Positions 19,575 through 48,366 of a stretch of 64,000 nt of DNA are shown in pieces; position 1 is the stretch's first letter; each line of letters starts with the position of its first letter. The translations under genes were made by a program, and so were the position numbers. Origin of the DNA: Octopus sinensis (taxonomy: Eukaryota); NCBI RefSeq assembly GCF_006345805.1, contig NC_043004.1, positions 103,106,001 to 103,170,000 of the forward strand. The letters are read 5' to 3'. The notes under the pieces were generated by a model. That model did no database searches. It had not been told where the DNA came from and saw nothing but the letters and a program-made list of their open reading frames with translations.

Positions 19575-21345
19575 GCTACAGAAAATATGTCTTCGAGAAA
19601 GAATATAAAGATTGGGATGATGAGATGAAAACCCGCTTAATCTTCAGAAAACTAGCACCAACAGAACATGAACGATACGGTAATTTTGTACTCCCAAGAA
19701 AACCGTCTGACGAAAACTTTAATGGAACAATGGATATATTGTGTAAGATTTTCAGCGAAAAAAGCTTCTTGTTCAACTCACGGTGGAAGTGTCTGAGCAT
19801 AGAGAAAAATAGTAACGAAGACTACATCACATATGCTGGTAGAGTAACCAGAGAATGTGAGACAGTTAAGCTGGATAAATTAACCTAGATATGTTCAAAT
19901 GCCTGATTTTTACACAGGGACTTACTGCAGGAAAAGGACGCAGAAGTCAGAACTAGAATTCTTGCAAAGCTGAAACAAAACCAAGATGTAACCCTGTAAA
20001 AATTGTCTGAAGAATGTGAAAGGATACTTAAATTAAGAGACGACACAGAGGAAATTGAACGCAAAGATTATTTCCAAGTAAAACCAGTGCAGAATAGTCT
20101 GAATAGAGATATAGAGTTTTCTAAAAAACACGACAAACATCAGGATATAAAGCCATGTTTTGCAAGTGATGGTATGCGACTGAGGAAAAACTGTCCATTT
20201 AAAAACGCGGCGTTTCGTTGTGGAAATATAGGATATATAAAGTCTTACGGATCTTTTCGGTTTGAACGGCAGTTTTTTCTAGCGGTATCATATGAAATTG
20301 TCACCCATAATTATGACCCTAGAATCGATCTATTGCATTTGAATTTCTTTTAGGGTTAGGGTTAGTTAGGGTTAGGGGTAGGGGAAGGGTATCTTTTTTC
20401 TTTACTAATGTAAATAAACCCAATCTGTTTCTTAAGCGAGGGACATATTCATACGGCACAGAATGCTTTTTAATTCAATGGGCGTCATCGATTGGTTGAA
20501 ATTGCAGAAATTGAAGAAAAAAACCCCAAATATCTTACAAACTATAGAATTTTCTCAATAAAGCCAAGAGAAAAAGATGTTTTATAAACACATTCTACCA
20601 GTATACGAAGCTTAAAATTTTTTAGTTACCTAGAAATTATGTTAAAAACTGCCGTTCAAACCGAAAAGATCCAGTCTTACTGTAGAACGAAGATGATAGA
20701 ACGTCAGAAAAAAGGTAAATGAATAAATAGTATGTCATTGGAAGAAATTGGAATTATAACAATGAAAAAATTCGTGAAGGTGAAAATCAGAAATACAACT
20801 GTTAAAATGCAGATGGACACGGGTAGTGACATTACTATTATAAACGAAAAAACGTAGAAATATGTCGGAAAACCGAATTTAATTAAATCTAAAAAAGTAG
20901 TGCATCGTGTTACAGGAAAAAATTTTTTTTTCGGTGAATTTCAATGTAATGTAACTTTTCGAGGTCAAACGAAAAAGGTTAAGATTTGTTGAAAGATGTG
21001 TTGCAAGATTCACTTAACTTGTTCGGCACAGAATGGCTGGCGCTATCTAAATTGTAGGAGACACCTATAAATGTTCTGTGTGGAAATGTAGTTAGTTCAG
21101 TCAGATGTTCAAATGAAGTTGAAGGATTGAGGCAAAAAGCAAAAAAGATTATTTCTATATGTTTTTTGGAAGAACTGAGTTGCAGTACAAAAAAAAAGCT
21201 GAGATCGCAGTAAAGCAAGGTACAACACCGGTCTTTAGGCCCATACGGAATGTGCCCTTTGCGGCAATAGACCAGGTTAACAAAGAACTGGAAAGACTGG
21301 GAATTCCTAGTATAATTGAAAGGAATGACTGGTTAACACCAACGA
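19575..21345 (+). mobile_element. Ty3/Gypsy relic, 5' half (gag, zinc knuckle, protease, start of RT)
   Basis: gag-like RKLAPTEHERYGNFVLP..FKCLIF; knuckle FRCGNIGYIKSYC restored when the MITE is removed; protease MQMDTGSD at ~20809-20830; PVFRPIRNVPFAA..DWLTP. Confidence 0.85.
20249..20672. mobile_element. 424-bp MITE, 29-bp perfect TIRs, 8-bp TSD, internal TTAGGG tract
   Basis: TIR ggatcttttcggtttgaacggcagttttt; TSD agtcttac at 20241-20248 and 20673-20680. Confidence 0.93.
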
Positions 21346-22430: not shown

Positions 22431-22454
22431 GGCATATCTTTTATCCTATCTTTT

Positions 22455-22683
22455 TTACTTGTTACAGTCCTTAGTCTGTGCCCATGCTGGGGCAACACCT
22501 TGAAGAAATTGTAGTCTAATGAATCTACTCCAATATATTTTTTTAAAGCCTAATGCTTATTTTATCGGCCGCTTTTGCCGAACCGCTAAGTTATGGGGAC
22601 GTTAACACCCATAACTTAGCGGTTCGGTAGTCAAGCGGTGGAGGGAGAGAAACACACACACACGCACACACGCACACACACAT

Positions 22684-22723
<40 letters not shown>

Positions 22724-22870
22724 GACGGGCTTCTTTTAGTTTTCGTGTATCAGATCTACTCGCGAGGTTTTGGTTGAAGACACATGCCCAAGATGCCACG
22801 CAGTGGGACTGAACCCGGAACCATGTGGTTGAGGAGCAATGGTCCTTACCACACAACTTCGCCTGCGCCT
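22455..22870 (-). mobile_element. SINE family A, diverged
   Basis: Head, (CA)n and tail in reverse orientation. Confidence 0.78.
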
Positions 22871-23297
22871 ATAAGAAACACGGCATCAATCGCTCGCTCC
22901 AGCGTCATCCATTTTCAGCAGATAAGTTGTTTCGCGCTCCTGAGCGGATTTCGACTCCAGTGGCCATTGTCCTGCTTTTATATCGACTGACACCCTTTCG
23001 GGGATCTAATGGGTGAAGCAAAACAAACGTTAGCCGGACGTTCGTGAAATATTAGGTAAAATATTTATTAAACTTCATTTCACCAAATACATACGAGGAA
23101 ATTCTTTGGAAACATCTACAGAAACTGTGAATGTCTTTCATCAACTATTCCTGTACAATGGATGCCTGTCATCAAAAAACTATCTTTTCTTCTTTTTTTT
23201 TTGTTACCTTCAGCTTTGCTAGTAAACCATTTCCCACTCCATTAATATGAAGAAAAGCAATGCTAGCCAACAGTTAAAATTGTCAATACTTGGATTG

Positions 23298-24410: not shown

Positions 24411-24969
24411 CTAATATTTATATTATGATAATCTTTTCTACTCTCGGCACAATGCCCGATTTTATATTATGATAATAAAAGCCCGATGCGGTCTTTTCGC
24501 CCCTTTAAATTATTTAAGCTTACTCTCTATAAAAATTAATTTGTAGTAAAAGAGAGTCCATTTTCCGTCAAATCATTCATTCTTGCACTGTATTCTGCTG
24601 CTGGTTGCATAGATTTAATGCAGTAATTTTTCAGTCATTCAATGTCAAATAACTTGAGGTGACAATTGATGTATCCTAGTGTCGGCTTCCTACCAGCTGT
24701 AAATCAACAAATATGAAGGACACTTTTGAGCTGTTCTGCAACAATGGGAAATAAACTACTGTAAAGCTGTATACGAAACAGCTTCGATTTACAGTTGAAA
24801 TATTTTTTCTTTAAGTTCCTAATCGTACTTTTCTTTTTGGTGGAAACAGTTGATACTTTTCATTTGCTTTGTAGTTTTTCCAATACTCAGAATGAAACAC
24901 GAGCGAAACCTAAGCCCCAGTTTTCAGCAATAAACCGGCAGCGGTGTGAATTTCTTAATTTTCCCCTTT

Positions 24970-25180
24970 ACTCTTTTACTCTTTTACTTGTTTCAGTCAT
25001 TTGACTGCGGCCATGCTGGAGCACCGCCTTTAATCGAGCAACTCGACCCCGAGACTTATTCTTTTGTAAGCCCAGTACTTATTCTATCGGTCTCTTTTGC
25101 CGAACCGCTAAGTAACGGGGACATAAACACACCAGCATCGGTTGTCAAGCAATGCTAGGGGGACAAACACAGACACACAA

Positions 25181-25229
<49 letters not shown>

Positions 25230-25393
25230 CGACGGGCTTCTTTCAGTTTCCGTCTACCAAATCCACTCACAAGGCTTTGGTCGGCCTGAGGCTATAGTAG
25301 AAGACACTTGCCCAAGGTGCCACGCAGTGGGACTGAACCCGGAACCATGTGGTTGGTAAACAAGCTACTTACCACACAGCCACTCCTGCGCCT
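24970..25393 (-). mobile_element. SINE family A, full length, little diverged
   Basis: Complete head-microsatellite-tail with (tactcttt)n end. Confidence 0.92.
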
Positions 25394-26893: not shown

Positions 26894-27036
26894 CGCAGAA
26901 GTGGCTGTGTGGTAAGTAGCTTGTTTACCAACCACATGGTTCCGGGTTCAGTCCCACTGCGTGGCATCTTGGGCAAGTGTCTTCTGCTATGCCTTGTGAG
27001 TGGATTTGGTAGACGGAAACTGAAAGAAGCTTGTCT

Positions 27037-27067
<31 letters not shown>

Positions 27068-27290
27068 GTATGTGTTCGTGTGTCTGTGTTTGTCCCCCTA
27101 GCATTGCTTGACAACCGATGCTGGTTGTTTATGTTCCCGTTACTTAGCGGTTCGACAAAAGAGACCGATAGAATAAGTACTGGGCTTACAAAAGAATAAG
27201 TCTCGGGGTCGAGTTGCTCGATTAAAGGCGGTGCTCCATCATGGCTGCAGTCAAATGACTGAAACAAATAAAAGAGTAAAAGAGAGTATA
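26891..27290 (+). mobile_element. SINE family A
   Basis: ggcgcagaagtggctg..gactgaaacaaataaaagagta, small head deletion. Confidence 0.9.
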
Positions 27291-32845: not shown

Positions 32846-33035
32846 AAAGGAGGCGAAAGTAATACAGCTATAGCGAAAAGGTTTAAAATTTACTGAACAT
32901 CAGTCTGGAAAATTTCAAGAGACTGGACCCTTCACTGATCGACCTAGACGTGGCCGAAAAAGAAGTGTGCCGACCCCTCGGTTTATCAAAAGTACCAGAA
33001 AAAAGACACGGCGAAATCTTCGTCGTTCGTGCTAA
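32846..33035 (+). pseudogene. DD37D (maT) mariner transposase, N-terminal HTH part
   Basis: GESNTAIAKRFKIY*TSVWKI then, after a frameshift, KFQETGPFTDRPRRGRKRSVPTPRFIKSTRKKTRRNLRRS. Confidence 0.8.
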
Positions 33036-33423
33036 GGGCGAGGTGCGTTTGCCCGTCTCCGTCGGTTAGCCGTGCCTGCGCTTTACGTGGAGCGACGGGC
33101 CCGGTCGAGAAGAGCGCGTGGATCCCACCGACCGCCGCTTGCGCGGCGGCGACGGGGCTCTCGTCTGCGACCTGCGGACGCCGCGCGCCTACCGGCCCGA
33201 CGGGAAACGGGTCGCGACGACGGATCGGAGGGGAAGTGCGTCCGATGCCGGCGCCCCGGGAATCGAACGCCGACGAGGCGGCAGACGACCGCCCGCGGAA
33301 CGAGCGGCCGCCACCGGCGCGTTCGTCGGCGACGACGGCGCCTCGGCGTGAAGCAGCGGACTGAGTCCCCTCGCGATCGCAGGGATAACTGGCTTGTGGC
33401 GGCCAAGCGTTCGCAGCGACGTC

Positions 33424-33461
<38 letters not shown>

Positions 33462-33503
33462 CGAAGCAGAATTCGCAAAGCGTTGGATTGTTCACCCACT
33501 AAC

Positions 33504-33550
<47 letters not shown>

Positions 33551-34155
33551 ATCCTACCGATGCATCGCGCGTACGCGGCGCCCCGAGTCGCGTCGGGGTA
33601 CTCGGCGTGCGGTCGAGGCGGCGGCGCGCTCGCGCGTCCGTCCGTCCTGGCCGTGCCGCCGGCGTTTCTCCGGCCGACCTTAGGCGGGCGTCGGCAACGT
33701 CAACTCGGCTACGGCTATCCCGTCCAGTACGAGAGGAACCGCGGGATCAGAGCAACGGTTTGCGCGCTCGCTCGATAGAGCGGTGGTGCCAGCTGCCTGC
33801 CTCTGAGCGATAACGGCTGAACGCCTCTAAGCGGAACCGTAGCCGGACCCGAGTTGTTTTCCAAAAGCGTCTCAACCTCAAGGCGCATGCCTTAGCTCGG
33901 CGTTCGCCGTCCGCCCGTCGCATTCGCGCGGCGAGCGGCAGCGTCGCCGGCGGAATTGCCATTCGGGGACGCGGCGGCGGCCGCGGCGTTCGCGCCGTGG
34001 TCGTCTGCTCGTCGTCCCGCCCCGACTAGTTCGAAGAGATCGAGACGAAAGGGATCGCTTGCATACGACCCGACTTGCCGTTCGGAGTGACGTGCTTAGT
34101 AGAGCAGCTACCACACTGCGATCTATTGAGTCTCTTCTCGCGAACGACACGATCC
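33036..34155 (+). rRNA. 28S rRNA: 28S rRNA, 3' fragment
   Basis: Conserved core from cagggataactggcttgtggcggcc (33380) through gatgtcggctcttcc and gagctgggtttagaccg, sarcin-ricin loop agtacgagaggaacc (33726-33740), terminal agagcagctaccacactgcgatctattgag; 33036-33378 only weakly alignable. Confidence 0.9.
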
Positions 34156-34399
34156 GCCCCTTCGAGGCGGAGAAGCGGGAGGAGGTGAGGAAAGATGGCG
34201 AAATTGTTGCGGCTCGGAGTCGGAGGAGTTACTTAGTGTTCGTTGCGTTGCGTTGCGTTGTGTCTCGTCTCGTCTCGTCACGTCTTGTCTGCGTCGAACG
34301 ACTCGGCGCGCGGTAATAGTCGTCGTCGCCGTAACCGCCTTCGTCTCGGCTTGGCAGCGCGCGCTCCGTTGCGGGTTCGTTTAAGTGAGAAGTGGAAGA

Positions 34400-34820
34400 A
34401 ACGGAACCTCCTGCTTAGTGCGCGAGTAGACGGGGTTGCCGCGCCAGCATGCAGCGCCCGTTTCGAACGTAACTTTCTGAACCGCCGACCAGTCGTCGCT
34501 CGTCGGCGTCCGGGTCGGTCCCCGGTCTCGCGGAGCGACGTACGACCTCTCAGTGGAACACCGCGACTGCCTGTTGTCGAAGCGGCGACTTCTGGGCATC
34601 GTCGTCCGATTGTCGAGGCGCCGCGTGAACGGATCGAAGGCGAGTAGCGTGTCCCTATCTACTGTCTAGCGAATGCAGAGCCGAGGGTACGGGCTTGAAG
34701 AAGTTCTCGGTATCGAGCGCGGGTAAACGGCGGGAGTAACTTGGTGAACGGATCGAAGGCGACGAGGATGTTGCCGCTATCCCTATCTACTACTGTCTAG
34801 CGATAAGCAGAGCTGAGTTA
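34400..34820 (+). pseudogene. Scrambled, degenerate 28S domain IV fragments in the spacer
   Basis: 26-nt match agcgcgggtaaacggcgggagtaact (34716-34741); two copies of gtgaacggatc..ccctatctact..tctagcga. Confidence 0.82.
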
Positions 34821-35602
34821 CTACGACGAAGACCACGAGTGTGTGTGTCCGTGTGTTATCCACGCGCATCGAAGCGGCGATTTCACTTGAGAGAGTTCTC
34901 GGTCGAGTGCACGAGTCGAAAGAGTTATGCGGCCGGTCGATTGCCGGGGAGTGAGTCTGAGTTACGACGAAGACCACGAGTGTGTGTGTCCGTGTGTTAT
35001 CCACGCGCATCGAAGCGGCGATTTCACTTGAGAGAGTTCTCGGTCGAGTGCACGAGTCGAAAGAGTTATGCGGCCGGTCGATTGCCGGGGAGTGAGTCTG
35101 AGTTACGACGAAGACCACGAGTGTGTGTGTCCGTGTGTTATCCACGCGCATCGAAGCGGCGATTTCACTTGAGAGAGTTCTCGGTCGAGTGCACGAGTCG
35201 AAAGAGTTATGCGGCCGGTCGATTGCCGGGGAGTGAGTCTGATTACGACGAAGACCACGAGTGTGTGTGTCCGTGTGTTATCCACGCGCATCGAAGCGGC
35301 GATTTCACTTGAGAGAGTTCTCGGTCGAGTGCACGAGTCGAAAGAGTTATGCGGCCGGTCGATTGCCGGGGAGTGAGTCTGAGTTACGACGAAGACCACG
35401 AGTGTGTGTGTCCGTGTGTTATCCACCGCATCGAAGCGGCGATTTCACTTGAGAGAGTTCTCGGTCGAGTGCACGAGTCGAAAGAGTTATGCGGCCGGTC
35501 GATTGCCGGGGAGTAAGTCTGAGTTACGACGAAGACCACGAGTGTGTGTGTCCGTGTGTTATCCACGCGCATCGAAGCGGCGATTTCACTTGAGAGAGTT
35601 CT
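34820..35602 (+). repeat. Tandem array of ~5.5 copies of a 141-bp unit
   Basis: gaccacgag at 34831, 34972, 35113, 35253, 35394, 35534; copies nearly identical. Confidence 0.95.
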
Positions 35603-38600
35603 CCCGAAATCGAAAGAACGAACCCAAGCTCGCGGTGCGGCCCACGGACGCGTGGACGTAGCCGCCACCGATGCTGGAAGGCGTTCGCGAGATGCACGCG
35701 CTCGATACGGCGACGCGGTCCGTCCCGTAAAGTCCCGAAAGATGACAAACTGCGGCTAGCGCTATCTAGCGGCAGGCCTGCGCCGTTCGCCCGCGTCTCC
35801 GCCGCCGAACCGTGCGTGAAATCGAAAGCACGAAACTAAGCGGGCGGTGTCGGCCACGTACGCGCGGACCTAGCCGCGACCGATGCTGCGAGGTACAGGC
35901 GTTCGATACGGCGACGTGGTCCGTCTCATAAATTCCCGAAAGATGACAAACTGCGGCCGGTGCCGGTAGCGGCGGGCCTGCGCCCGCGCCTCCGACGCGC
36001 TACCGCGAGGCTGAGGTGGGGGCTTGAGCGAAGCTTGCGCTCTCGCCCACGTACACGTGGACGTAGGCGCGATCGATGCCGTCAGTCGCCGGGAATGCGT
36101 GGCGACATGCACCGGGTAAAAACAGCGACGTGGTCCGACCCGTGAGTTAAGGAGGTGCTCGGACCGTAAGCAAACGGATCGGCCCCGGCTGGATAGTCAC
36201 GCCTCTAGGTGACCGTCGCACCCCAAGGGGGTCAAGACTATATTGAGGGCTTGCAGTCGGCAGTTTTCATGCCTCGGGGACCGTTCGGCAGGATGCCAGA
36301 GACGTCAGCCCGGCGGGTGGCCGCCGCCTTCGCGCCGCCTCGCTTTCTCCCGTTCGTCCACGAGCCGCGGGGCGTTAGCGGCAGACCCGCGCCGGTCGCC
36401 CGGTTCCTCCGCCGCGCTAACCGTGCCCGAAACCGAAAGAACGAACCCACGCTCGCGGTACGGCCCACGGACGCGTGGACGTAGGCGCCACCGATGTTGG
36501 AAGGGCGTTCACGAGATGCACGCCGTCGAACGGCGACGCGGTCCGTCCCGTAAAAACCCGAAAGATGGCAAACTGCGGCTAGCGCGGTCGCCCGTTGCTC
36601 CGCCACCCTAACGTGCCCGAAATCGAAAGAACGAACTTGAGCGTGCGGTCTCTCCCCACGTACGCGTGGACGTAGCCGCGACCGATGTCGCGACGTGCGG
36701 GCGTTCGATGCGGCGACGCGTCCGTCCGTAAATTCCCGAAAGATGACAAACTGCGGCCGGTGCATGCAACGGCCGATAGCGGCGGCCATGCGCCCGCCTT
36801 CTACCGCCTTCGTCCGCAGCCCCGCCGCGCGACCGCGAGGTTCAAGCGGGGCTCGAGCGAAACGTGCGCTCTCGCCCACGTACACGTGGACGTAGGCGCG
36901 ATCGATGCCGTCAGTCGCCGGGAGTGCGTGGCGATATGCACCGGGCGAAAACAGCGACGCGGTCCGACCCGCGAGTCAGGGAGGTGCTCGGACCGTAAGC
37001 AAACGGATCGGCCCCGGCTGGACAGTCACGCCTCTAGGTGACCGTCGCACCCCGAGGGGGTCAAGACTATATTGAGGGCTTGCAGTCGGCAGGTTTCATG
37101 CCTCGGGGACCGTTCGGCAGGATGCCAGAGACGTCAGCCTACGACGCCGTCAGCCCGGCGGGCCGCCGCCGCCTTCGCGCCGCCTCGCTTTCGCCCGTTC
37201 CTCCACGCCCCGCTGGGCCGTTAGCGGAAGGCCTGCGCCTGTCGCCCGTTGCTCCGCCGCGCTACCGTGCCCGAAATCGAAAGAACGAAGCCAAGCTCGC
37301 GTCACGGCCCACGTACGCGCGGGCGTAGCCGCCAGCGATGCCGGAAGGCGTTCACGAGATGAACGCGCTCGATACGGCGACGCGGTCCGTCCCGTAAAAT
37401 CCCGAAAGATGACAAAAACTGCGGCTAGCGCGATGTAGCGGCAGGCCTGCGCAAGGCCTGCGCCGGTCGCCCGCGTCTCCGCCGCCGAACCGTGCGTGGA
37501 ATCGAAAGCACGAAACTAAGCGATGTTGCGAGGTACGGGCGTTCGATACGGCGACGTGGTCCGTCTCGTAAATTCCCGAAAGATGACAAACTGCGGCCGG
37601 AGCCGGTGGCGGCGGGCCTTCGCCCGCGCCTCCGCCGCGCTACCGCGAGGCCGAAGTGGAGCTTGAGCTAAGCTGGCGCTCTCGCCCACGTACACGTGGA
37701 CGTAGGCGCGATCGATGCCGTCAGTCGCCGGGAGTGCGTGGCCATATGCACCGGGCAAAAACAGCGACGTGGTCCGACCCGTGAGTTAGGGAGGTGCTCG
37801 GACCGTAAGTTAAACGGATCGGCCCCGGCTGGATAGTCACGCCTCTAGGTGACCGTCGCACCCCAAGGGGGTCAAGACTATATTGAGGGCTTGCAGTCGG
37901 CAGGTTTCATGCCTCGGGGACCGTTCGGCAGGACGCCAGAGACGTCAGCCTGCGACGCCGTCAGCCCGGCGGGCGGCCGCCGCTTTCGCGCCGCCTCGCT
38001 TTCTCCCGTTCGTCCGCGAGCCGCGGGGCCGTTGGCGGCAGGCCCGCGCCGGTCGCCCGTTCCTCCGCCGCGCTACCGTGCCCGAAACCGAAAGAACGAA
38101 CCCACGCTCGCGGTACGGCCCACGGACGCGTGGACGTAGGCGCCACCGATGTTGGAAGGGCGTTCACGAGATGCACGCCGTCGATACGGCGACGCGGTCC
38201 GTCCCGTAAAAACCCGAAAGATGGCAAACTGCGGCTAGCGCGGTCGCCCGTTGCTCCGCCACCCTAACGTGCCCGAAATCGAAAGAACGAACTTGAGCGT
38301 GCGGTCTCGCCCACGTACGCGTGGACGTAGCCGCGACCGATGTCGCGAGGTGCGGGCGTTCGATGCGGCGACGCGGTCCGTCCCGTAAATTCCCGAAAGA
38401 TGACAAACTGCGGCCGGTGCAGGCAACGGCCGATAGCGGCGGCCATGCGCCCGCCTTCTACCGCCTTCGTCCGCAGTCCCGCCGCGCGACCGCGAGGTTC
38501 AAGCGGGCTCGAGCGAAACCTGCGCTCTCGCCCACGTACACGTGGACGTAGGCCGCGATCGATGCCGTCAGTCGCCGGGTGGCGTGGCGATATGCCACCG

Positions 38601-41600
38601 GGCAAAAACAGCGACGTGGTCCGACCCGTGAGTTAGGGAGGTGCTCGGACCGTAAGCAAACGGATCGGCCCCGGCTGGATAGTCACGCCTCTAGGTGACC
38701 GTCGCACCCCGAGGGGGTCAAGACTATATTGAGGGCTTGCAGTCGGCAGGTTTCATGCCTCGGGGACCGTTCGGCAGGATGGCAGAGACGTCAGCCTACG
38801 ACGCCGTCAGCCCGGCGGGCCGCCGCCGCCTTCGCGCCGCCTCGCTTTCTCCCGTTCCTCCACGCCCCGCTGGGCCGTTAGCGGCAGGCCTGCGCCTGTC
38901 GCCCGTTGCTCCGCCGCGCTACCGTGCCCGAAATCGAAAGAACGAAGCCAAGCTCGCGTGACGGCCCACGTACGCGCGGGCGTAGCCGCCAGCGATGCCG
39001 GAAGGCGTTCACGAGATGAACGCGCTCGATACGGCGACGCGGTCCGTCCCGTAAAATCCCGAAAGATGACGAAAACTGCGGCTAGCGCGATGTAGCGGCA
39101 GGCCTGCGCAAGGCCTGCGCCGGTCGCCCGCGTCTCCGCCGCCGAACCGTGCGTGGAATCGAAAGCACGAAACTAAGCGATGTTGCGAGGTACGGGCGTT
39201 CGATACGGCGACGTGGTCCGTCTCGTAAATTCCCGAAAGATGACAAACTGCGGCCGGAGCCGGTAGCGGCGGGCCTTCGCCCGCGCCTTCGCCCGCGCCT
39301 CCGCCGCGCTACCGCGAGGCCGAAGTGGGGCTCGAGCTAAGCAGGCGCTCTCGCCCACGTACACGTGGACGTAGGCGCGATCGATGCCGTCAGTCGCCGG
39401 GAGTGCGTGGCCATATGCACCGGGCAAAAACAGCGACGTGGTCCGACCCGTGAGTTAGGGAGGTGCTCGGACCGTAAGTTAAACGGATCGGCCCGGCTGG
39501 ATAGTCACGCCTCTAGGTGACCGTCGCACCCAAGGGGGTCAAGACTATATTGAGGGCTTGCAGTCGGCAGGTTTCATGCCTCGGGGACCGTTCGGCAGGA
39601 CGCCAGAGACGTCAGCCTGCGACGCCGTCAGCCCGGCGGGCGGCCGCCGCTTTCGCGCCGCCTCGCTTTCTCCCGTTCGTCCGCGAGCCGCGGGGCCGTT
39701 GGCGGCAGGCCCGGCCGGTCGCCCGTTCCTCCGCCGCGCTACCGTGCCCGAAACCGAAACCGAAAGAACGAACCCACGCTCGCGGTACGGCCACGGACGC
39801 GTGGACGTAGCCGCCACCGATGTTGGAGGGCGTTCACGAGATGCACGCCGTCGATACGGCGACGCGGTCCGTCCCGTAAAAACCCGAAAGATGGCAAACT
39901 GCGGCTAGCGCGGTCGCCGTTGTGTTCTCCGCTGCCCTAGCGTGCCCGAAATCGAAAGAACGAACTTGAGCGTGCGGTCTCGCCCACGTACGCGTGGACG
40001 TAGCCGCCACCGATGCCGGAAGGCGTTCACGAGATGCACGGCGACGTGGTGCGTCCCGTGAAAACACGAAAGATGGCAAACTGCGGCTAGCACGGTCGCC
40101 CGTTGCTCCGCCGCCCAGACGTGCCCGAAATCGAAAGAACGAACCTAAGCTCGCGGTGCGACTCCCGTACGCGTGGACGTAGCCGCCACCGGTGCCGGAA
40201 GGCGTTCACGAGATACCGGCGCTCGATAGGAGTACGTGGTCCGTCCCGTAAAATCCCGAAAGATGACAAACCGCGGCCAGCACGAGGTAGCGGCGGAAGG
40301 CGTGCGCCGGTCGCCCGCGTCTCCGCCGCCCTACCGTGCGTGAAATCGAAAGCCCGAACTTGAGCGTGCGGTCTCGCCCGCGTACGCGTGGACGTAGCCG
40401 CGACCGATGTCGCGACGTGCGGGCGTTCGATGCGGCGACGCGGTCCGCCCCGTAAATTCCCGAAAGATGACAAAGTGCGGCCGGTGCAGGCAACGGCCGA
40501 TTGCGGCGGGCATGCGCCCGCCTTCTACCGCCTTCGCCCGCAGCTCCGCCGCGCTACCGCGAGGCTCTAGTGAGACTCGAGCGAAACTCGCGCTCTCGCC
40601 CGCGTACGCGTGGACGTAGGCGCGATCGATGCCGTCAGTCGCCGGGAGTGCGTGGCGATATGCACCGGGTAGAGACAGCGACGTGGTCCGACCCGTGAGT
40701 TAAGGAGGTGCTCGGACCGTAAGCAAACGGATCGGCCCCGGCTGGATAGTCACGCCTCTAGGTGACCGTCGCACCCCAAGGGGGTCAAGACTATATTGAG
40801 GGCTTGCAGTCGGCAGGTTTCATGCCTCGGGGACCGTTCGGCAGGACGCCAGAGACGTCAGCCTGCGACGCCGTCAGCCCGGCGGACGGCCGCCGCCTTC
40901 GCGCCGCCTCGCTTTCTCCCGTTCGTCCGCGAGCCGCGGGGCCGTTAGCGGAAGGCCCGCGCCGGTCGCCCGTTCCTCCGCCGCGCGACCGTGCCCGAAA
41001 CCGAAAGAACGAACCCACGCTCGCGGTACGGCCCACGGACGCGTGGACGTAGCCGCCACCGATGCCGGAAGGCGTTCACGAGATGCACGACGTTGATACG
41101 GTGACGCGGTCCGTCCCGTAAAAACACGAAAGATGGCAAACTGCGGCAAGCACGGTCGCCCGTTGCTCCGCCGCCCTGACGTGCCCGAAATCGAAAGAAC
41201 GAAGCTAAGCTCGCGGTGCGACCCCCGTACGCGTGGACGTAGCCGCCACCGATGCCGGAAGGCGTTCACGAGATGCATGCCGTCGATACGGCGACGTGGT
41301 GCGTCCCGTGAAAACACGAAAGATGGCAAACTGCGGCTAGCACGGTCGCCCGTTGCTCCGCCGCCCTGACGTGCCCGAAATCGAAAGAACGAACCTAAGC
41401 TCGCGGTTCGACCCCCGTACGCGTGGACGTAAGCCGCCACCGGTGCCGGAAGGCGTTCGCGAGATACCGGCGCTCGATAGGAGTACGTGGTCCGTCCCGT
41501 AAAATCCCGAAAGATGACAAACTGCGGCTAGCACGAGGTAGCGGCGGAAGGCGTGCGCCGGTCGCCCGCGTCTCGCCGCCCTACCGTGCGTGAAATCGAA

Positions 41601-42045
41601 AGCACGAACTCGAGCGTGCGCGTCTCGCCCGCGTACGCGTGGACGTAGCCGCGACCGATGTCGCGACGTGCGGGCGTTCGATGCGGCGACGCGCGGTCCG
41701 TCCCGTAAATTCCCGAAAGATGACAAAGTGAGGCCGGTGCAGGCAACGGCCGATTGCGGCGGCATTCGCCCGCTTTCTACCGCCTTCGCCCTCGGCTCCG
41801 CCGCGCTACCGCGAGGCTCGATTGGGACTCGAGCGAAACTCGCGCTCTCGCCCGCGTACGCGTGGACGTAGGCGCGATCGATGCCGTCAGTCGCCGGGAG
41901 TGCGTGGCGATATGCACCGGTAAAACAGCGACGTGGTCCGACCCGTGAACAAGGAGGTGCTCGGACCGTAAGGAAACGGATCGCGCCCCGGCTGGATAGT
42001 CACGCCTCTAGGTGACCGTCGCACCCAAGGGGGTCCAGACTAATA
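35603..42045 (+). repeat. rDNA intergenic spacer: promoter-bearing units with nested 180-205 bp subrepeats
   Basis: gact(a)atat motif at 36236, 37065, 37876, 38722, 39543, 40789, 42038; gaaagatg(a/g)caaa subunits two or four per unit. Confidence 0.92.
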
Positions 42046-42055
42046 TGTAGGGTTG
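41920..42055 (+). promoter_or_regulatory. Putative RNA polymerase I gene promoter / initiation site
   Basis: Last copy of the repeated block; diverges from the six upstream copies at gactaatatgtagggtt and leads into the ETS. Confidence 0.55.
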
Positions 42056-43625
42056 TGGTTGATCGGCATAGGTTAGCGTCTCGGAAGGATGTCCTCGTAG
42101 CTCCTTTCCTGATGACGGTTAGCTCCCCGTTTGCCGGTGCAAGATCGATTCTACACGGCCGGCGCGTCCTCGAATTTCCGCCGCCGAACCGCCCGCCTTT
42201 CAGACGCTGCGTTCGCCCGCCCGTTGACGCCCGCGTTTGCCCGCCTTCGCCCGCCTTTTGAAGCTCGCCTTCGTCCGCCTTCGCCCGCCTTCGCCCGCCT
42301 TCGCCCGCCTCTGGACGTCCGCTTCTTCACGCCCGCCTATTAGACGCTGCGTTCTACCCGCATCTTTGGACGCACGCCTTCGCCCGCCTTTCAGACGCCG
42401 CTGCGTTCGCCCGACCCTTTCGACGCACGCGTTTGCCCGCCCGCCTTATTTCCTTCCTTCGCTCGCCCGCCGGCAACCGCCGCACAAGCGCTATTCACGT
42501 AGGGTCGCGGCCGAACGGCATAGGTGGACCGCCTGGAAGGGATGTTGACGGCGCTCCTTTCTGCCAACGGTTGGCTCCCTTATTGCCGGTGCAAGGTCGA
42601 CTCTACACGGCTGGCGCGTCCTCGAATGTCTGCCGCCGCCGCCGCACCGCCCGCCTTTTAGACGCGCTCCCTCGACGCCCGCGTCTGCCCGCCTCTTCAC
42701 GCTCGCAATCGGTTCGTCCTCCCGCAATCGAACCGCTTCTCGTTACCGCGTTTTCTTTTTTTCTTCTCTTCTCTTTTCTTCCTTCCGACCCCCGGCCTCG
42801 TCTTCGCCGCCGAGGACCCGGTCAGGTTACGCCGCTGACCTCGTGTCGCGTCGCCGCCGGCGCGGCGGACGGGCTAGCCGTCGCTTCCCGTTCCGCCACA
42901 GGCGACGCGGCGTCTCCGAAAGAGAGCGGTGCCGTGTCCGTCCCTTCTTCCCTGGACGGAACCGTGGCTTCAACTCCGGGTTTCGCTGCCTCGTAGCGTT
43001 TCTGCAGCTTTTTCTTTTCCCTTCCCGGCATCACCCCCGCCTTGCGCGCGTCGTTTTCGTGGCGACCACCGTCATGGCACTCGCTCGTTGACCGCAGTCC
43101 GGACGCACTTCGTCGCACCGTTTCGAAAGGATCGGTGGAGGAGGAGGAAGCGACGACGACGACGACCACCGACGCGTAGGGCGCCGGCGAGTCTAAAAGC
43201 TGCAGCGGGCCCGCGCCAATCGCCGCTGCCCCTCTCGTCTGCCGACCTAGTCGCTGGCCTTCTTCGCCTTCTCTTCTCTTCCCTCTTCTTCCGCCCGGAA
43301 CCGGCCCCCACTTCGAATCGACCCGCACCGGAGCCCGTCCGCAGCGGCCCCGGTGTGCGGCAGTCGGATCGCAAACCGTTTCTTGTATCGCGAACGCTTC
43401 TTCGCGCGTCGACCCGTGTCGTTTCCGCCTCTTCTCCTCCTGGAGGAGCAGCTGGCGCGCGCGTATACGAACGGCGGCCGAACTCGCGAGCGCCCTCGCG
43501 CCTCTCTGTTTTTTTCGGCCCCTCCGATTCCTTTCGTTCTCGTTTTCCGATCGTCGGCGGCGGGCGGCTGCTTCCCGAGCTTCCGCCGCCGCGCGCTTCG
43601 TTCTCTCGAAACGTAACGTCGGTGA
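42050..43625 (+). other. Putative 5' external transcribed spacer
   Basis: Lies between the last promoter-like repeat and 18S; internal ~145-bp duplication and (ttcgcccgcc)n. Confidence 0.7.
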
Positions 43626-45302
43626 TACCTGGTTGATCCTGCCAGTAGTCATATGCTTGTCTCAAAGCTTAAGCCATGCAAGTGTAAGTTCATGCCGTAA
43701 ACGAATGGTGAAACCGCGAATGGCTCAGGAACCGGACCTAATCCTCGGGACCGTATTCTTCCACCGCGAGGAGAGTGGATAACTGTGGCAATTCTAGAGC
43801 TAATACATGCAACCGAAGCCACGATCGCAGGTCGCACCCGGGCGTCGGGCTCGAAAACGGCGTTCGGCAGCCGTCGCGTTTCGCGCGGCGTCGCCGTCGT
43901 TCGCCGCCGGCGTCCGCTCGGCCGGATCTAGGGCGGTGCATCCGCGCCCGTCCCTCCCGGTCGCGACGATACGGTCGGCCTTCCGCATTGGTCGCGGCGC
44001 AAATATTAGACTGAGACCGACGCGTACGGGCCGTTGCAGCAGCCGCCGCGCCTTCCGCGCGCGGGTCTTAGGCGTGCGGCGGCTTCACGCCCTTCGATTT
44101 TGGTGACTCTGGATAACTGTCAGTACGATCGCACGGCTAGTATCGCACTAGCCTTCGCGCGACGGGTCCCCCGCGAGTCCGCCCTATCAACTGTCGACGG
44201 CCCGGTCAGTGCCGACCGTGGTGGCAACGGGTAACGGGGAATCAGGGTTCGATTCCGGAGAGGGAGCATGCGAAACGGCTACCACATCCAAGGAAGGCAG
44301 CAGGCGCGCAAATTACCCACTCCCGGCACGGGGAGGTAGTGACGAAAATAACGACGCGGGACTCTGTCGAGGCCCCGCGATCGGAATGAGTACACTTCAA
44401 ATCCGTTAACGAGGATCGACCGGAGGGCAAGTCTGGTGCCAGCAGCCGCGGTAATTCCAGCTCCGGTAGCGTATATTAAAATTGTTGCGTTTGAAAAGCT
44501 CGTAGTCGGAATTCGGGTCTCGAAAACGTGCCCCAGCACGTTCGGGGCGACGGCGCCGTCGCAGGCGCGCTTCTGGCGCGTCCGCTTCGGTCGTCCGTTC
44601 GCACTCCCGGCCTTATTCGCCGGTGCGTGCGCGGTCGGGCCGCGGAGCTCTGCTCGCGTCGCCGCCGCGACTCGGCACCCCGTCCAGCGCTCGTCTTCGC
44701 CCGCGTCGCGTCCGGTTTCACGCCTGCGCCTTCAACGGCGCGGGTCGGTCAGGCGTGCTGCGCGCGCGGGAGCCACGAGGCGGGTGCGCTATTGGGCGTC
44801 GTCGCCGTTCGCGTTCTAGCGGTAGTAGCGCGTCCACCTCCCGGTCGTTTCGGCCCGCACGGTTCCTCCGAGGGTGCTCTTCGCCGAGTGTCCGAGGCGG
44901 CCGGTACGTTCACTGTGAAAAATTAGAGTGCTCAGAGCGAGCCCCGCCGGCTTGCATACGAAAAGCATGGAATGATGGAAAATGGCCTCGTCCGCGCGTC
45001 ATCCGTCGGTCTCCGTTCACGACGAGGCAATGATCGAAGGGAGCGATCGGGGCCACTCGTATTGCGACGTTAGAGGTGAAATTCTTGGATCGTCGCAAGA
45101 CGCACTGCAGCGACGGCGTGTGGCAAGCACGTTTTCCTCGATCAAGAGCGAAAGTCGGAGGTTCGAAGACGATCAGATACCGTCGTAGTTCCGACCGTAA
45201 ACGATGCCGACTGGCGCTCCGCCGCGCGTTCGCTTCGATGACCCGGCGGGGAGCCTGCGCGGGAAACCATAGTCGGTTCCGGGGGAGTATGGTTGCAAAA
45301 CA

Positions 45303-45348
<46 letters not shown>

Positions 45349-46028
45349 GCGGCTTAATTTGACTCAACACGGAAAACTCACCCGGTCCGGACACCGGTAG
45401 GATTGACAGATCGATAGCTCTTTCTCGATTCGGTGGGTGGTGGTGCATGGCCGTTCTTAGTTGGTGGAGCGATCCGTCTGGTTGATTCCGATAACGAACG
45501 AGACTCCGGCCTGCTAACTAGCGCGTCGATTAGTGCTTTTCCGGTAGCGCGGCGGCGCCGAAGCCGTCGTCGGTAGCTCCGCGCGCGGCCCGGCTTGCCG
45601 TTGCCGCCGCTCTCCTTCGCGTCCGGCGCTGCGGCCGCGTCCGGCTGCCGTCCCCCGTTCGCGGGGGTTCGGTCGCGGCGTGGTTGCGGCGTCGGTTGCG
45701 GAGCGGCGGCGTGACCCGGTCGGCTCGGCCCGCGCGAGCCCGGCGGCGGCACGCCGTCGCGTCCGGCCAGTCGGTTGGCGAACGCAGCGCTTCTTAGAGG
45801 GACGGGCGGCAGAAAGCCGCACGAGGCGGAGCGATAACAGGTCTGTGATGCCCTTAGATGTCCGGGGCCGCACGCGCGCTACACTGGAGGTATCAGCGGG
45901 CGCGTCTCCCCCGGCCCGAGAGGGTCGGGAAACCTCTGAACCACCTCCCGTGATAGGGATCGGGGCCTGGAACCAACCCCGTGAACGAGGAATTCCCGGT
46001 AGGCGCGGGTCATCAGCCCGCGTCGATC

Positions 46029-46071
<43 letters not shown>

Positions 46072-46190
46072 CGAACGGTCCGGTGAGGTCCTCGGATCTG
46101 GCCGACGAGTCCGCTTACGCGCGGCGGCGTTCCGCGCCGTCGTCGGCGCGTTCTCTGATGGCCCGGAGAAGACGACCGAACCCGATCGCT

Positions 46191-46248
<58 letters not shown>
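43626..46248 (+). rRNA. 18S rRNA: 18S rRNA, expanded (2623 nt)
   Basis: tacctggttgatcctgccag start; gccagcagccgcggtaattcc; gacggaagggcaccaccagg; gtacacaccgcccgtc; gtaggtgaacctgcggaaggatcatta end; large GC-rich variable-region insertions. Confidence 0.97.
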
Positions 46249-47517
46249 GCGCCGTGTTCTCGAATTAGAGAAGAAGAAGGAAATAAACATTCGCGATCCG
46301 CCCGATAAGTCGCGGCCGGGCCCCCTCGCCCGAGTACCACCGAATGCTCTTGATTCGGCCCTCTAACAGCGCAGCAGTAGCCGTCGCGGCAGCCCGCCGT
46401 CACACGCCGCGACTCTCTGCTGCCGACCGCGCAACCACCCTGCCGGCGTCGGCCCGCCCTCATGGCGCTCGGACGACGGGGCTTGCACGCTTTGCGAGCT
46501 CCATGACCATTTTCTCTCTTCCTTCCTGCCTCGCCGACCGCGCGATTCGGCCTAGGCCGGGGCGCCGCGGCGCCTTCCGATGACCACCGTAACGCGCGCC
46601 GTCTTTTTTTTTCTTTTCCTCGCCTCCTAGCGCGCAGTCTCTTTTCGAGACTTGCCGAGCCAAAAGTCGCGGCCGGGCCCCCTCGCCCGAGTACCACCGA
46701 ATGCTCTTGATTCGGCCCTCTAACAGCGCAGCAGTAGCCGTCGCGGCAGCCCGCCGTCACACGCCGCGACTCTCTGCTGCCGACCGCACAGCCACCCTGC
46801 CGGCGTCGGCCCGCCCTCATGGCGCTCGGACGACGGGGCTTGCACGCTTTGCGAGCTCCATGACCATTCTCTCTTCCTTCTACCATCGCCGTTGGCGTCG
46901 GCAGTGGCGCGCTTCGTTCCGCTGTCGACGCCTTCGAATCTCATTTTATTTTTTCCGTCGCGCGGCGCCGGCCTCCTGTCGGGGGCCGCTGCCGCTTTCC
47001 TTTTTTTTTTTTTTTTTTTTTTTTACTTTCCGTACGTCTAGCCCCGTCCGGTCGAGAGGCGGTCAAGACACGAAAACGCAGTCCGCCGCGGCCGTTGGCT
47101 GCGGCGGGGAGTCGGGAGTCGCAGGAAAGGGCGGCGCTCGCCGCGAGGCCCGCACGTTATCTCGCTCGATCGTCCGTCTCCCGTAATGCCAGACCGTCAT
47201 CGTTGCGAAGCGCTGTTGCGGAGGAGGGAGCCCGCCGAAGTGCGGAAGCAGTGGAGTAAGGGATCGCAGTAGCAGGAACGACACGGCGAGGCCCCTCGTC
47301 GCGTCCGCGTCTTCCTCTGCGTTCCTCTCCGAGCGACCGCCGCCCTCCGTCGCTGCCGCCGCAGCCGCCGCCGTCTCGTCTTTCGGCGTTCGCTCTGTGG
47401 GAACATCTTCTTTCGTGCGAGCGTTCGTGCCGATCGACAGCGGTGGCGGTGCGCGCCGGTAGTAGCAAGCTGCTGCAGCAGCCGTCTCTTTTGCAGCGTC
47501 TCCTTTTTTTATTCACG
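46249..47517 (+). other. Internal transcribed spacer region with ITS1 duplication
   Basis: Between 18S end and 28S start; ~220-bp repeat at 46307-46526 and 46664-46880. Confidence 0.85.
47025..47062 (+). pseudogene. Probable 3'-terminal remnant of 5.8S rRNA
   Basis: cgtccggtcgagaggcgg (47045-47062) is complementary to the 28S 5' end ctgccctcgactcggacg (47518-47535); no 5.8S core motif upstream. Confidence 0.5.
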
Positions 47518-47962
47518 CTGCCCTCGACTCGGACGCGATTACCCGCCGAACTTAAGCATATCGCTAAGCAGAGGAAAAGAAACCAACCGGGATTCCCTAA
47601 GTAACGGCGAGTGAACCGGAGAGAAGCCCAACGCCGAATCTCGTCGGCCGCGCGGTCGGTCGTCGAGAGCTGTGGCGCAAGGGTCGTACACGGTCGATCG
47701 TTTCGCCCGGCTAGGTTCGGAGTCCCCTCGATCGGGGCTGCCCAGAGCGGGTGCCAGGCCCATTCGGAGCCGGCGGCGATCGGCGGTGTTCATCGGCCCG
47801 AGAGTCGGGTTGCTTGGGAACGCAGCCCAAAGCGGGTGGTAAGCTCCATCCAAGGCTAAATACGGGGACGAGTCCGATAGCCGACAAGTACCGCGAGGGA
47901 AAGTTGAAAAGAACTTTGGAGAGAGAGTTCAAGAGACCGTGAAACCGCCCAGGGGTAAACGT
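47518..47962 (+). rRNA. 28S rRNA: 28S rRNA, 5' fragment (D1 to start of D2)
   Basis: acccgccgaacttaagcata; agtaacggcgagtgaa; gagtcgggttgcttgggaacgcagc; acaagtaccgcgagggaaagttgaaaagaacttt; ends at gtgaaaccgcccaggggtaaacg. Confidence 0.95.
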
Positions 47963-48135: not shown

Positions 48136-48136
48136 G

Positions 48137-48321
48137 CTCTCTTTTACTTGCTTCAGTCATGTGGCTGCGGCCATGCTGGAGCACCGCTTTTAGTCGAGCA
48201 AATCGAACCCAGGACTTATTCTTTGTAAGCCTAGTACTTATTCTATCGGTCCCTTTTGCCGAACCGTTATGTTACGGGGACGTACACACACCAGCATCGG
48301 TTGTCAAACACGGACACACAA

Positions 48322-48366
<45 letters not shown>

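What the first reader, a model, noticed from the sequence alone, without database searches (positions are those of the whole stretch)
34400..34820. Scrambled fossil of 28S domain IV in the spacer, twice skipping the R2/I-PpoI target site
Seen: downstream of the 28S 3' end lie pieces resembling the conserved LSU core in the order A (gacttctg..tgtcgaggcg), C (gtgaacggatc..ccctatctactgtctagcga..cgggcttg), B (agcgcgggtaaacggcgggagtaact, a 26-nt match), C again. The canonical order is A-B-[atgactctcttaaggtagccaaatgcc..]-C. Established: the bracketed segment holds the R2 retrotransposon insertion site (TTAAGG/TAGC) and the I-PpoI homing endonuclease site. Both joins into C omit it. Inference: these are scars of endonuclease cleavage and deletion repair, afterwards duplicated and retained in the spacer.
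Basis: partly seen in the sequence, partly recalled or inferred. Interest (0 to 1): 0.78.

Follow-up and report, generated by a model that had tools for sequence, protein, structure and literature searches.

The report
Decayed 28S pieces in rDNA spacer
About 440 bases after a truncated 28S rRNA gene, the spacer holds three worn-down copies of pieces of the 28S core, duplicated locally at the head of the spacer's repeat array. They are real relics, but nothing here shows that an endonuclease made them.

Summary
The sequence observation holds in part. Three blocks are significantly 28S-like: C (34650-34702, nhmmer E=8e-9), B (34696-34741, E=1e-6, containing the exact 26-mer) and C' (34772-34817, a 76% copy of C). 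Block A is marginal (p~0.04) and can be aligned in other ways. The R2/I-PpoI target is absent from the whole window.

The order C-B-C' is what local duplication gives. C and C' share four derived changes against the universal 28S core. The block sits at the 5' edge of a 141-bp tandem array whose unit is collinear with it.

The missing stretch brackets the R2 nick (-15/-12 to +9 in both copies; to about +24 at the B->C' join). No breakpoint lies at the nick, and a loss of that size covers the site by chance with P of about 0.1-0.3. No R2 or intron sequence lies beside it.

The host rDNA unit is itself dead: the 28S is cut at both ends, there is no 5.8S, and the flanks are repeat-rich.

One result was unexpected. 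Four unrelated metagenomic rDNA contigs also carry short pieces of this same 28S neighbourhood in their spacers. One of them (L065) matches B over 32/32 bases, including six non-28S flank bases.

The endonuclease-scar reading is unproven. Interest is moderate to low.

The parts
33381..34155 (+). Truncated 28S rRNA gene: the last ~775 nt only, starting abruptly at CAGGGATAACTGGC
   Evidence: cmscan RF02543, 286 bits, effectively model ~2822-3399. nhmmer 33380-34145, E=1e-107. It differs at 3 of 103 near-invariant LSU columns.
34156..34571 (+). Unique spacer leader with no LSU similarity
   Evidence: Local alignments to the LSU consensus are no better than shuffles (hits 4-7). No nhmmer hit.
34572..34620 (+). 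Block 'A': weak and ambiguous 28S-like stretch. Its first 16 nt (TCGAAGCGGCGACTTC) recur in every 141-bp unit.
   Evidence: Consensus 128-173 at 31/46, p~0.04, or consensus 238-263 at 18/26. Repeat family D4.
34596..34702 (+). Block C (copy 1). The solid core is 34650-34702, TGTCCCTATCTACTGTCTAGCGAATGCAGAGCCGAGGGTACGGGCTTG. The upstream 54 nt are only weakly alignable.
   Evidence: nhmmer E=7.9e-9 for the core. Smith-Waterman 80/103 to consensus 238-342. Core mismatches 6/48.
34696..34744 (+). Block B: 28S consensus 172-213 with a 4-nt insert. It contains the exact 26-mer (34716-34741). 34713-34744 is identical to a spacer element of metagenome contig L065.
   Evidence: nhmmer E=9.9e-7. 26-mer unique in the window. 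32/32 match to L065 1009-1040, including the non-28S flanks TCG and TGG.
34744..34817 (+). Block C' (copy 2 of C). It carries a 3-nt ACT duplication and small indels. The core is 34772-34817.
   Evidence: blastn 76% over 74 nt to 34625-34685, E=3e-7. Repeat families D6 and D7. Smith-Waterman 39/49 to consensus 276-324. nhmmer E=0.13.
34822..35603 (+). 141-bp tandem array: 5.6 copies at 99% identity. Its unit is collinear with the fossil unit but shorter.
   Evidence: TRF. Repeat families D1-D4. Alignment of 34577-34868 to one unit. No LSU hit of its own.
35603..42052 (+). Long spacer repeats: about 830-900 bp, 7-8 copies, 83-88% identical, with internal ~190-bp sub-repeats
   Evidence: Self-blastn and TRF.
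43626..46248 (+). 18S rRNA gene, unusually long at 2623 nt
   Evidence: cmscan RF01960, 1308.7 bits, model 1-1831.
46249..47518 (+). Internal spacer without any 5.8S. It contains a 220-nt internal duplication.
   Evidence: No 5.8S at E<=1. No TCGATGAAGAACGCAGC with up to 3 mismatches. Duplication 46298-46517 / 46655-46874 at 97%.
47519..47962 (+). 5' end of the 28S gene: the first ~440 nt only, then unrelated AT-rich DNA
   Evidence: cmscan model 1-~425 with high posterior. nhmmer 47499-47981. Sequence read directly.

Best explanation
The block 34596-34817 is an old, non-coding relic of the 28S domain-IV core that came to lie in the intergenic spacer. It was then copied locally by the same unequal exchange or slippage that builds spacer sub-repeat arrays.

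What survives recognisably are three short cores, each about 10-14% diverged from the universal 28S sequence: C, B and C'. The order C-B-C' is simply two neighbouring units of a head-to-tail repeat. B followed by C' is the canonical order, with about 35-39 nt missing between them.

The 99%-identical 141-bp array that starts right after C' is a shortened, recently amplified descendant of the same unit. The recognisable 28S-like copies sit at the array's 5' edge, where repeats are least homogenised.

The stretch around the R2/I-PpoI site was lost by ordinary deletion. Imperfect direct repeats flank the site in every 28S: TAACTATGAC at consensus 209-218 and TAATTAGTGAC at 249-259. They give a ready substrate, and the observed join AACT-TGGTGAAC falls in them.

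Shown: the homology of the three cores, the duplication, the position at the array edge, the absence of the site, and the dead state of the host unit. Inferred: the order of events, the deletion mechanism, and the lack of present function.
For: 1. Homology of B, C and C' to LSU: nhmmer E=9.9e-7, 7.9e-9 and 0.13. Smith-Waterman scores beat 300/300 shuffles.
2. The cores are equally diverged: C 6/48, B 4/42, C' 5/37 mismatches, Fisher p~1. One age fits all three. A perfect run of 26 nt is expected about half the time at 88-90% identity (P=0.45-0.62).
3. C and C' are copies of each other. They are direct repeats 119-131 nt apart and 76% identical over 74 nt. In the core they share four departures from near-universal 28S letters: ACTA->ACTG, CCACAG->GCAGAG (two changes) and CCAAGG->CCGAGG/CTGAG (sequence).
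4. Link to the array. The motifs TCGAAGCGGCGAYTTC (94%) and CTTGARRAGTTCTCGGT... (71% over 31 nt) recur in register in all 141-bp units. They stand in the same order as in 34577-34868, and the last 47 nt are identical. The local score of the non-identical parts is 105 against a shuffle mean of 74.7, sd 11.0.
5. Nothing nearby points to a mobile element. Spacer ORFs have no Pfam domains. Rfam finds no family other than rRNA.
6. Chance covers the missing site with P=0.08-0.29 for one loss of 24-46 nt.
Against: 1. The homology between the fossil unit and the 141-bp unit rests on two short motifs plus the shared tail. TRF does not join them, and the shuffle test is only about 2.8 sd.
2. The segment missing from both copies (consensus 214/217-237) brackets the R2 nick tightly, from -15/-12 to +9. 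A neutral model gives this only about 10% of the time.
3. B is identical over 32 nt, including six non-28S flank bases, to a spacer element of an unrelated metagenomic animal-like rDNA contig (L065). A private neutral relic should not share this. It suggests constraint, a mobile carrier or deep common descent.
4. I could not see this species' intact 28S or its canonical rDNA units. The 'shared derived' letters of C and C' could in principle be the species' own 28S state. The block might also exist only in this dead copy.
Confidence: 0.55

Rival explanations
1. A 28S copy was cut at the R2/I-PpoI site by a site-specific endonuclease. The ends were chewed back and rejoined, possibly through the short repeats flanking the site. 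The repaired piece ended up in the spacer and was then duplicated.
For: - The site is absent from both copies.
- The commonly missing segment is a tight bracket around the nick, -15/-12 to +9. The B->C' loss runs from about -15 to +24.
- The observed join lies in imperfect repeats that flank the site, which is what microhomology-mediated repair of a break between them would use (consensus).
- B coincides with the published footprint of the upstream R2 protein subunit, -40 to -20 (PMC6895275, read).
- R-element-type insertions at this site are common in the metagenomic 28S genes fetched here (L029, L069, L066).
Against: - No breakpoint lies at the nick itself.
- The chance probability is 0.08-0.29.
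- No R2-type coding or RNA element lies in or near the block.
- I-PpoI is an intron-encoded enzyme of a slime mould (general knowledge), and Rfam finds no group I intron in the window.
- In other taxa the spacer copies of this neighbourhood often retain the site in diverged form (L110, L088, L079).
- The same deletion needs no break: replication slippage between the flanking repeats is enough.
Confidence: 0.15
2. B, and perhaps the whole neighbourhood, is a maintained cis-element of the spacer. It would be a DNA site bound by a host factor or by an rDNA-specific element's protein, as a decoy or landing half-site, kept similar to the 28S sequence by selection. C and C' would be incidental.
For: - 32/32 identity between the window and L065, including four shared non-canonical letters (TCG....TGG). 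These letters occur in none of the other 119 loci.
- The two spacers share nothing else.
- Pieces of the same ~130-nt neighbourhood occur in multiple copies in the spacers of four unrelated contigs and in both orientations, which suits a DNA-level rather than an RNA-level role.
- No other LSU region turned up as a small spacer fragment.
Against: - Two of the four contigs (L065, L110) were fetched because their spacers contain the 26-mer, which is ascertainment bias.
- Short diverged fragments are detectable only from the most conserved LSU stretches, which is detection bias.
- The equivalent position in the window's own 141-bp units is degenerate (GAGTGCACGAGTCGAAAGAGTTATG), so the motif is not kept within this array.
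- The host unit here is a pseudogene.
- No binding factor is known to me.
Confidence: 0.12
3. The blocks are separate captures. Short pieces of rRNA or rDNA, the most abundant RNA and a fragile locus, were inserted as filler at spacer breaks at different times. This would give a patchwork with no single ancestral fragment.
For: - Another stray 28S fragment lies far from the rDNA, at 22881-23015 (-), E=2e-23. Dispersed rRNA-derived pieces therefore do occur in this genome.
- The order is not canonical.
- The sequences between the cores are hardly alignable.
Against: - The three cores are equally diverged.
- C and C' are clearly copies of one another rather than two captures.
- All the pieces come from one ~170-nt stretch of a 3.4-kb gene.
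Confidence: 0.08

Closest known systems
Spacer (IGS) sub-repeat arrays built from duplicated pieces of the rDNA unit or of inserted sequences
   Same: - Tandem head-to-tail copies between the 28S end and the 18S.
- A very homogeneous interior with diverged edge units.
- Growth by unequal exchange.
- The general idea that spacer tandem repeats arise by duplication of inserted sequences is argued in PMC10319768 (read).
   Different: Here the founding sequence is a piece of the 28S coding core (domain IV). It is not a promoter, a terminator or a transposon remnant.
rDNA pseudogenes, orphons and dispersed rRNA-derived fragments
   Same: - The host unit is a partial, dead rDNA copy in repeat-rich DNA.
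- A further stray 28S piece lies 11 kb away.
- The review PMC10946416 cites work showing that rDNA fragments add to junk DNA and that transposons can carry rDNA fragments (for example SINE28, which contains 28S fragments).
   Different: The block lies inside the spacer of an rDNA unit. It shows no sign of a carrier element, poly-A tail or target-site duplication.
R2 retrotransposon target site and its junction variants
   Same: - The same 28S neighbourhood is involved.
- B overlaps the -40 to -20 footprint of the upstream R2 subunit. The missing piece overlaps the nick and the start of the downstream footprint (PMC6895275).
- A paper on Drosophila R1/R2 integration and second-strand priming exists (PMC2718515). 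I saw only its abstract.
   Different: - No R2 sequence is present.
- No breakpoint lies at the nick.
- The location is in the spacer rather than in a 28S gene.
Spacer copies of the same 28S neighbourhood in metagenomic rDNA contigs L065, L110, L079 and L088
   Same: - Short (30-75 nt), multi-copy pieces from consensus ~160-285, lying in the spacer.
- L065 shares B's non-canonical flanks exactly.
   Different: - These copies mostly keep the R2 site or stop at it. L065 ends at AAGGT. L110 and two L088 copies span the site.
- None has a C block.
- Their orientations differ.
- The organisms are unknown.

Membership tests
Fragment homologous to eukaryotic LSU rRNA | Significant similarity to an LSU sequence profile | tested here: met
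   nhmmer with a profile of 31 LSU genes: C E=7.9e-9, B E=9.9e-7, C' E=0.13. Smith-Waterman scores beat all shuffles.
Fragment homologous to eukaryotic LSU rRNA | Match to the Rfam covariance model RF02543 | tested here: not met
   cmscan of 34300-34900 at E<=10 gave no match. The pieces are too short and carry no structure context.
R2 insertion or cleavage scar | Breakpoint at the R2 nick, TTAAGG|TAGC (consensus 228|229) | tested here: not met
   B ends at consensus 213-216 (-15/-12). C starts at about 238 (+9). C' starts at about 252 (+24). The edges are uncertain by tens of nt.
R2 insertion or cleavage scar | R2-derived sequence next to the join (reverse transcriptase / restriction-like endonuclease ORF, 3' UTR element or 5' ribozyme) | tested here: not met
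   No Pfam domain in spacer ORFs. No Rfam family other than rRNA.
R2 insertion or cleavage scar | R2-type elements present in the genome | not testable with these tools
   Only this window is available. Its one reverse transcriptase (1073-3403) has RVT_1 + zf-RVT and lies 30 kb from the rDNA.
Group I intron / I-PpoI-type homing site | Intron or homing-endonuclease gene at or near the site | tested here: not met
   The gathering-threshold Rfam scan of the whole window found only rRNA. The target site itself is absent.
Spacer tandem sub-repeat array (edge units) | Lies between the 28S 3' end and the 18S and is repeated head to tail | tested here: met
   The block starts 441 nt after the 28S end. 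C and C' are direct repeats 119-131 nt apart. The 141-bp array, 5.6 copies, begins at 34822.
Spacer tandem sub-repeat array (edge units) | Homology between the block and the array unit | tested here: inconclusive
   Two collinear motifs (94% over 16 nt; 71% over 31 nt) plus an identical 47-nt tail. The shuffle test is about 2.8 sd. TRF does not link them.
rDNA pseudogene / orphon unit (the host of the block) | Truncated or missing rRNA genes, flanked by non-rDNA | tested here: met
   Only the last ~775 nt and the first ~440 nt of 28S are present. There is no 5.8S. Flanks are 35-45% GC with SINE-like repeats. The unit differs at 3/103 and 3/115 near-invariant LSU columns.

The most novel reading that the evidence does not exclude
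Short copies of the 28S stretch that surrounds the R2/I-PpoI site, in particular the ~32-nt B element, may be a recurrent and selectively maintained component of rDNA spacers in distant eukaryotes. They could act as DNA half-sites for a host factor, or for the proteins of rDNA-specific mobile elements, as decoys or break sites that feed rDNA copy-number change. On this reading the window's block would be one decayed example, not a private accident.
Probability: 0.12. Interest if true: 0.7.

Novelty: new member of a known kind. Interest (0 to 1): 0.33.

Why it matters
As it stands, this is a small case study in how spacer repeat arrays are born. A piece of coding rDNA is stranded in the spacer, duplicated and shortened, and its origin stays legible only in the edge copies.

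It would matter more if the cross-species hint holds. The same 28S neighbourhood recurs in spacers of unrelated organisms, and one case shares B's private flank letters. That would point to a conserved spacer element tied to the most heavily targeted site in the ribosomal genes. The question can be tested on the complete rDNA units that long-read assemblies now provide.

Tried and rejected
1. 'B is much younger than C'. A first count at near-invariant LSU columns gave B 1/34, C 19/72 and C' 20/52. Restricted to the solidly aligned cores, the difference vanished: 4/42, 6/48 and 5/37, Fisher p~1. The excess came from the poorly alignable 5' halves of C and C'. Rejected.

2. 'The perfect 26-mer needs a special explanation'. 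At 88-90% identity a run of 26 is expected in 45-62% of cases. Rejected for the window alone.

3. Exact junction mapping. The stretch GTGAACGGATCGAAGGCGA at the start of C and C' can be read as consensus 255-274, as 261-279, as a decayed B, or as consensus 159-177 (as in L065). I could not settle it.

4. Finding this spacer elsewhere.
- Exact look-ups of three window ORFs found nothing.
- Two protein-level searches with spacer and 28S-end ORFs found nothing.
- Scans of genome contigs and viral contigs for AACGGCGGGAGTAACTTGG gave 0 hits.

5. Ribozyme or R2 RNA elements next to the spacer fragments of L065, L079, L088 and L110: none at E<=1.

6. 'Fragment ends in other taxa cluster at the nick'. 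L065 ends at AAGGT, but L110, L079 and two L088 copies run through the site. Given fragment lengths of 30-75 nt and selection on the 26-mer, the clustering is not informative.

7. The Tc1/mariner reading of the DNA flanking the rDNA block rests on my eye only. Pfam gave only weak HTH hits, below the curated cut-offs, for the upstream piece and nothing for the downstream piece.

8. Literature searches for octopus rDNA spacers and for 28S-like spacer elements found nothing specific.

Full report
SETTING

The window is not a run of normal rDNA units. Rfam finds an 18S gene at 43626-46248, a 28S 3' piece at 33350-34155 and a 28S 5' piece from 47519/47542.

- Read closely, the 3' piece begins abruptly at CAGGGATAACTGGC (33381). 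The conserved 28S sequence that should precede it is absent.
- The 5' piece stops at about 47962 and is followed by AT-rich DNA, a SINE-like repeat and microsatellites.
- Between the 18S and the 28S start lie 1270 nt with no 5.8S at all and an internal 220-nt duplication.
- GC content falls from 59-67% inside the block to 35-45% on both sides.

The 'spacer' of the finding therefore belongs to a partial, dead rDNA copy. That copy differs from near-invariant LSU letters at about 3% of positions (3/103 and 3/115), so it is a fairly young pseudogene. The window holds no intact 28S domain IV for comparison.

REFERENCE

I scanned metagenome contigs for the 26-mer and obtained 120 eukaryotic LSU loci.

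- In 68 loci with enough flank, the 26-mer is followed by ATGACTCTCTTAAGGTAGCCAAATGCC....
- I built a 471-nt consensus. In it the 26-mer is positions 188-213 and the R2 nick lies between 228 and 229.
- I also built an LSU profile from 31 long loci.

THE OBSERVATION

- The 26-mer is exact and unique at 34716-34741.
- The profile hits C at 34650-34702 (E=7.9e-9), B at 34696-34741 (E=9.9e-7; 46 nt with a 4-nt insert) and C' at 34774-34803 (E=0.13).
- Smith-Waterman alignments give 34596-34702 against consensus 238-342 (80/103), B at 28/30, and 34765-34817 against consensus 276-324 (39/49). Each beats all 300 shuffles. Nothing in 34400-34570 does.
- C and C' are direct repeats.
- Block A is marginal. 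Consensus 128-173 aligns at 31/46 (p~0.04), and part of the same DNA fits consensus 238-263 as a collinear extension of C.
- Rfam's own LSU model sees nothing here.
- The R2/I-PpoI target is absent from the whole window.

HOW THE PIECES RELATE

- The three solid cores are equally diverged from the consensus: 6/48, 4/42 and 5/37. An earlier impression that B was younger was an artefact of the badly alignable 5' halves of C and C'.
- At 88-90% identity, a perfect 26-mer is unremarkable.
- In the core, C and C' share four departures from letters that are near-universal in 28S: ACTG for ACTA, GCAGAG for CCACAG, and CCGAGG/CTGAG for CCAAGG. They were therefore copied from one another after the relic had already diverged.
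- Both copies start with the same GTGAACGGATCGAAGGCGA.

The block stands directly in front of a 141-bp array of 5.6 copies at 99% identity.

- Every unit of that array contains TCGAAGCGGCGATTTC and CTTGAGAGAGTTCTCGGTCGAG... in the same order as 34577-34592 and 34694-34724.
- The last 47 nt of 34577-34868 are identical to the unit.
- I read 34577-34868 as a long, old edge unit. The 141-bp units would be a shortened descendant that was amplified recently.
- This link is moderately supported (about 2.8 sd over shuffles; TRF does not join them).

On this view the order is not scrambled. It is two adjacent units of a head-to-tail repeat, and B-then-C' is the canonical order with a gap.

THE GAP

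- At the B->C' join the window reads GAGTAACT-TGGTGAACGG.
- The most parsimonious alignment puts B's end at consensus 213-216 and C' from about 252. That is a loss of about 35-39 nt, from 12-15 nt upstream to about 24 nt downstream of the nick.
- Copy 1 can be followed back to consensus 238 (+9).
- The piece missing from both copies is thus consensus 214/217-237, a tight bracket around the nick.
- Every 28S carries imperfect direct repeats on either side of the site: TAACTATGAC at 209-218 and TAATTAGTGAC at 249-259. The join falls within them.
- Slippage between these repeats, or repair of a break between them, would give the same product.
- A simple placement model gives P=0.08-0.29 that one loss of 24-46 nt covers the site, and 0.12 for two independent losses.
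- No R2, intron or endonuclease sequence is near.

The endonuclease reading is therefore compatible with the data but not demonstrated.

AN UNEXPECTED COMPARISON

I ran the LSU profile over the 120 fetched loci. About 38 of them include at least 400 nt of spacer. Four carry short extra LSU pieces in the spacer, and all come from the same neighbourhood, profile 3245-3335.

- L110: three tandem copies spanning -47 to +22 relative to the nick.
- L079: six copies covering -40 to -2, antisense to its 28S.
- L088: four copies covering -21/-2 to +29/+55, antisense.
- L065: at least four copies in both orientations, covering -69 to about +1/+5 and ending ...CTCTTAAGGT.

Two of these loci (L110, L065) were fetched because of those very copies, so their frequency is biased. 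L079 and L088 were not. Apart from these pieces, the spacers share nothing with each other or with the window.

L065 is special.

- Window 34713-34744 equals L065 1009-1040 over 32/32 nt. The match includes TCG before and TGG after the 26-mer, where 28S has different letters.
- No other locus has AACTTGG.
- A fourth L065 copy also resembles the window's right flank (GTGTACGGATCGA against GTGAACGGATCGA, p~0.009).

This is hard to square with a purely private, neutral relic. It is the basis of the more novel reading: a maintained spacer element overlapping the -40 to -20 footprint of the upstream R2 subunit (PMC6895275). The evidence is thin. It rests on one contig of unknown origin and carries ascertainment and detection biases. 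The motif is also degenerate in the window's own 141-bp units.

VERDICT

The best explanation is an old 28S-derived relic that seeded, or sits at the edge of, the spacer repeat array and lost the R2-site stretch by ordinary deletion (confidence 0.55).

- A maintained cis-element (0.12) and separate captures (0.08) are the other rivals.

Nothing could be checked against the species' canonical rDNA or against relatives, because no suitable sequence was reachable. Those comparisons are the decisive next steps.

Noticed in passing
window 33381-47962: The rDNA here is a single partial, dead unit. It has the last ~775 nt of 28S, the spacer, an 18S, an internal spacer with no 5.8S, and the first ~440 nt of 28S. 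It is embedded in AT-rich, repeat-rich DNA, so it is an rDNA orphon and not part of a regular array.
   Followed up: partly
window 46249-47518: No 5.8S gene lies between the 18S and the 28S. The stretch contains a 220-nt direct duplication (46298-46517 / 46655-46874, 97%).
   Followed up: partly
window 43626-46248: The 18S is 2623 nt long against a model of 1831, and scores 1308.7 bits. A normal 18S on contig L088 scores 1580.5. Large insertions or decay were not examined.
   Followed up: no
window 22881-23015 (-): A stray 135-nt 28S fragment from a different part of the gene (nhmmer E=2e-23, about 19-27% diverged, with a 15-nt internal gap). It lies 10 kb outside the rDNA block, next to a SINE-like repeat.
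   Followed up: partly
window 33030-33380: A GC-rich stretch directly upstream of the truncated 28S. It shows no similarity to LSU, to the rest of the window or to any Pfam domain. Its origin is unknown.
   Followed up: partly
window 32860-33030 and 48520-49010: By eye, these are the N-terminal (helix-turn-helix) and C-terminal (catalytic) parts of a frameshifted Tc1/mariner-type transposase. They lie on the same strand and in the right order on either side of the rDNA block, as if the block had been inserted into one element. Pfam gave only weak HTH hits, below the curated cut-offs, for the upstream piece and nothing for the downstream piece.
   Followed up: partly
window 48128-48509, 56829-57233, 8145-8535, 24967-25387, 26897-27289, 5063-5406, 22439-22858 and others: A ~400-bp SINE-like repeat family with many copies (74-92% identical), often ending in (AC)n/(AT)n microsatellites.
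   Followed up: no
window 1073-3403: A LINE-type reverse transcriptase ORF pair (RVT_1 E=3e-28; zf-RVT E=1.5e-8). It is not next to the rDNA and shows no R2-type features in the domains found. A DUF7083 ORF lies at 19352-19888.
   Followed up: no
loci L065, L110, L079, L088 (spacers): Unrelated metagenomic rDNA contigs carry multi-copy 30-75-nt pieces of the 28S stretch around the R2/I-PpoI site in their spacers, in either orientation. L110 has a second piece per repeat that reads GTAACT|TAGCCA/TAACCAAATGC, which is B's end joined at the nick.
   Followed up: partly
loci L029, L069, L066, L027, L092, L001: These are metagenomic 28S genes interrupted at or near the R2/R1 sites by insertions of 0.8-4.6 kb. 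L029 has a 14-nt overlap of the flanks, as R1 elements give. The insertions were not characterised.
   Followed up: no
window 35603-42052: The rest of the spacer is 7-8 copies of an ~830-900-bp repeat (83-88% identical) with internal ~190-bp sub-repeats. C-rich short repeats lie at 42190-42441, before the 18S.
   Followed up: no
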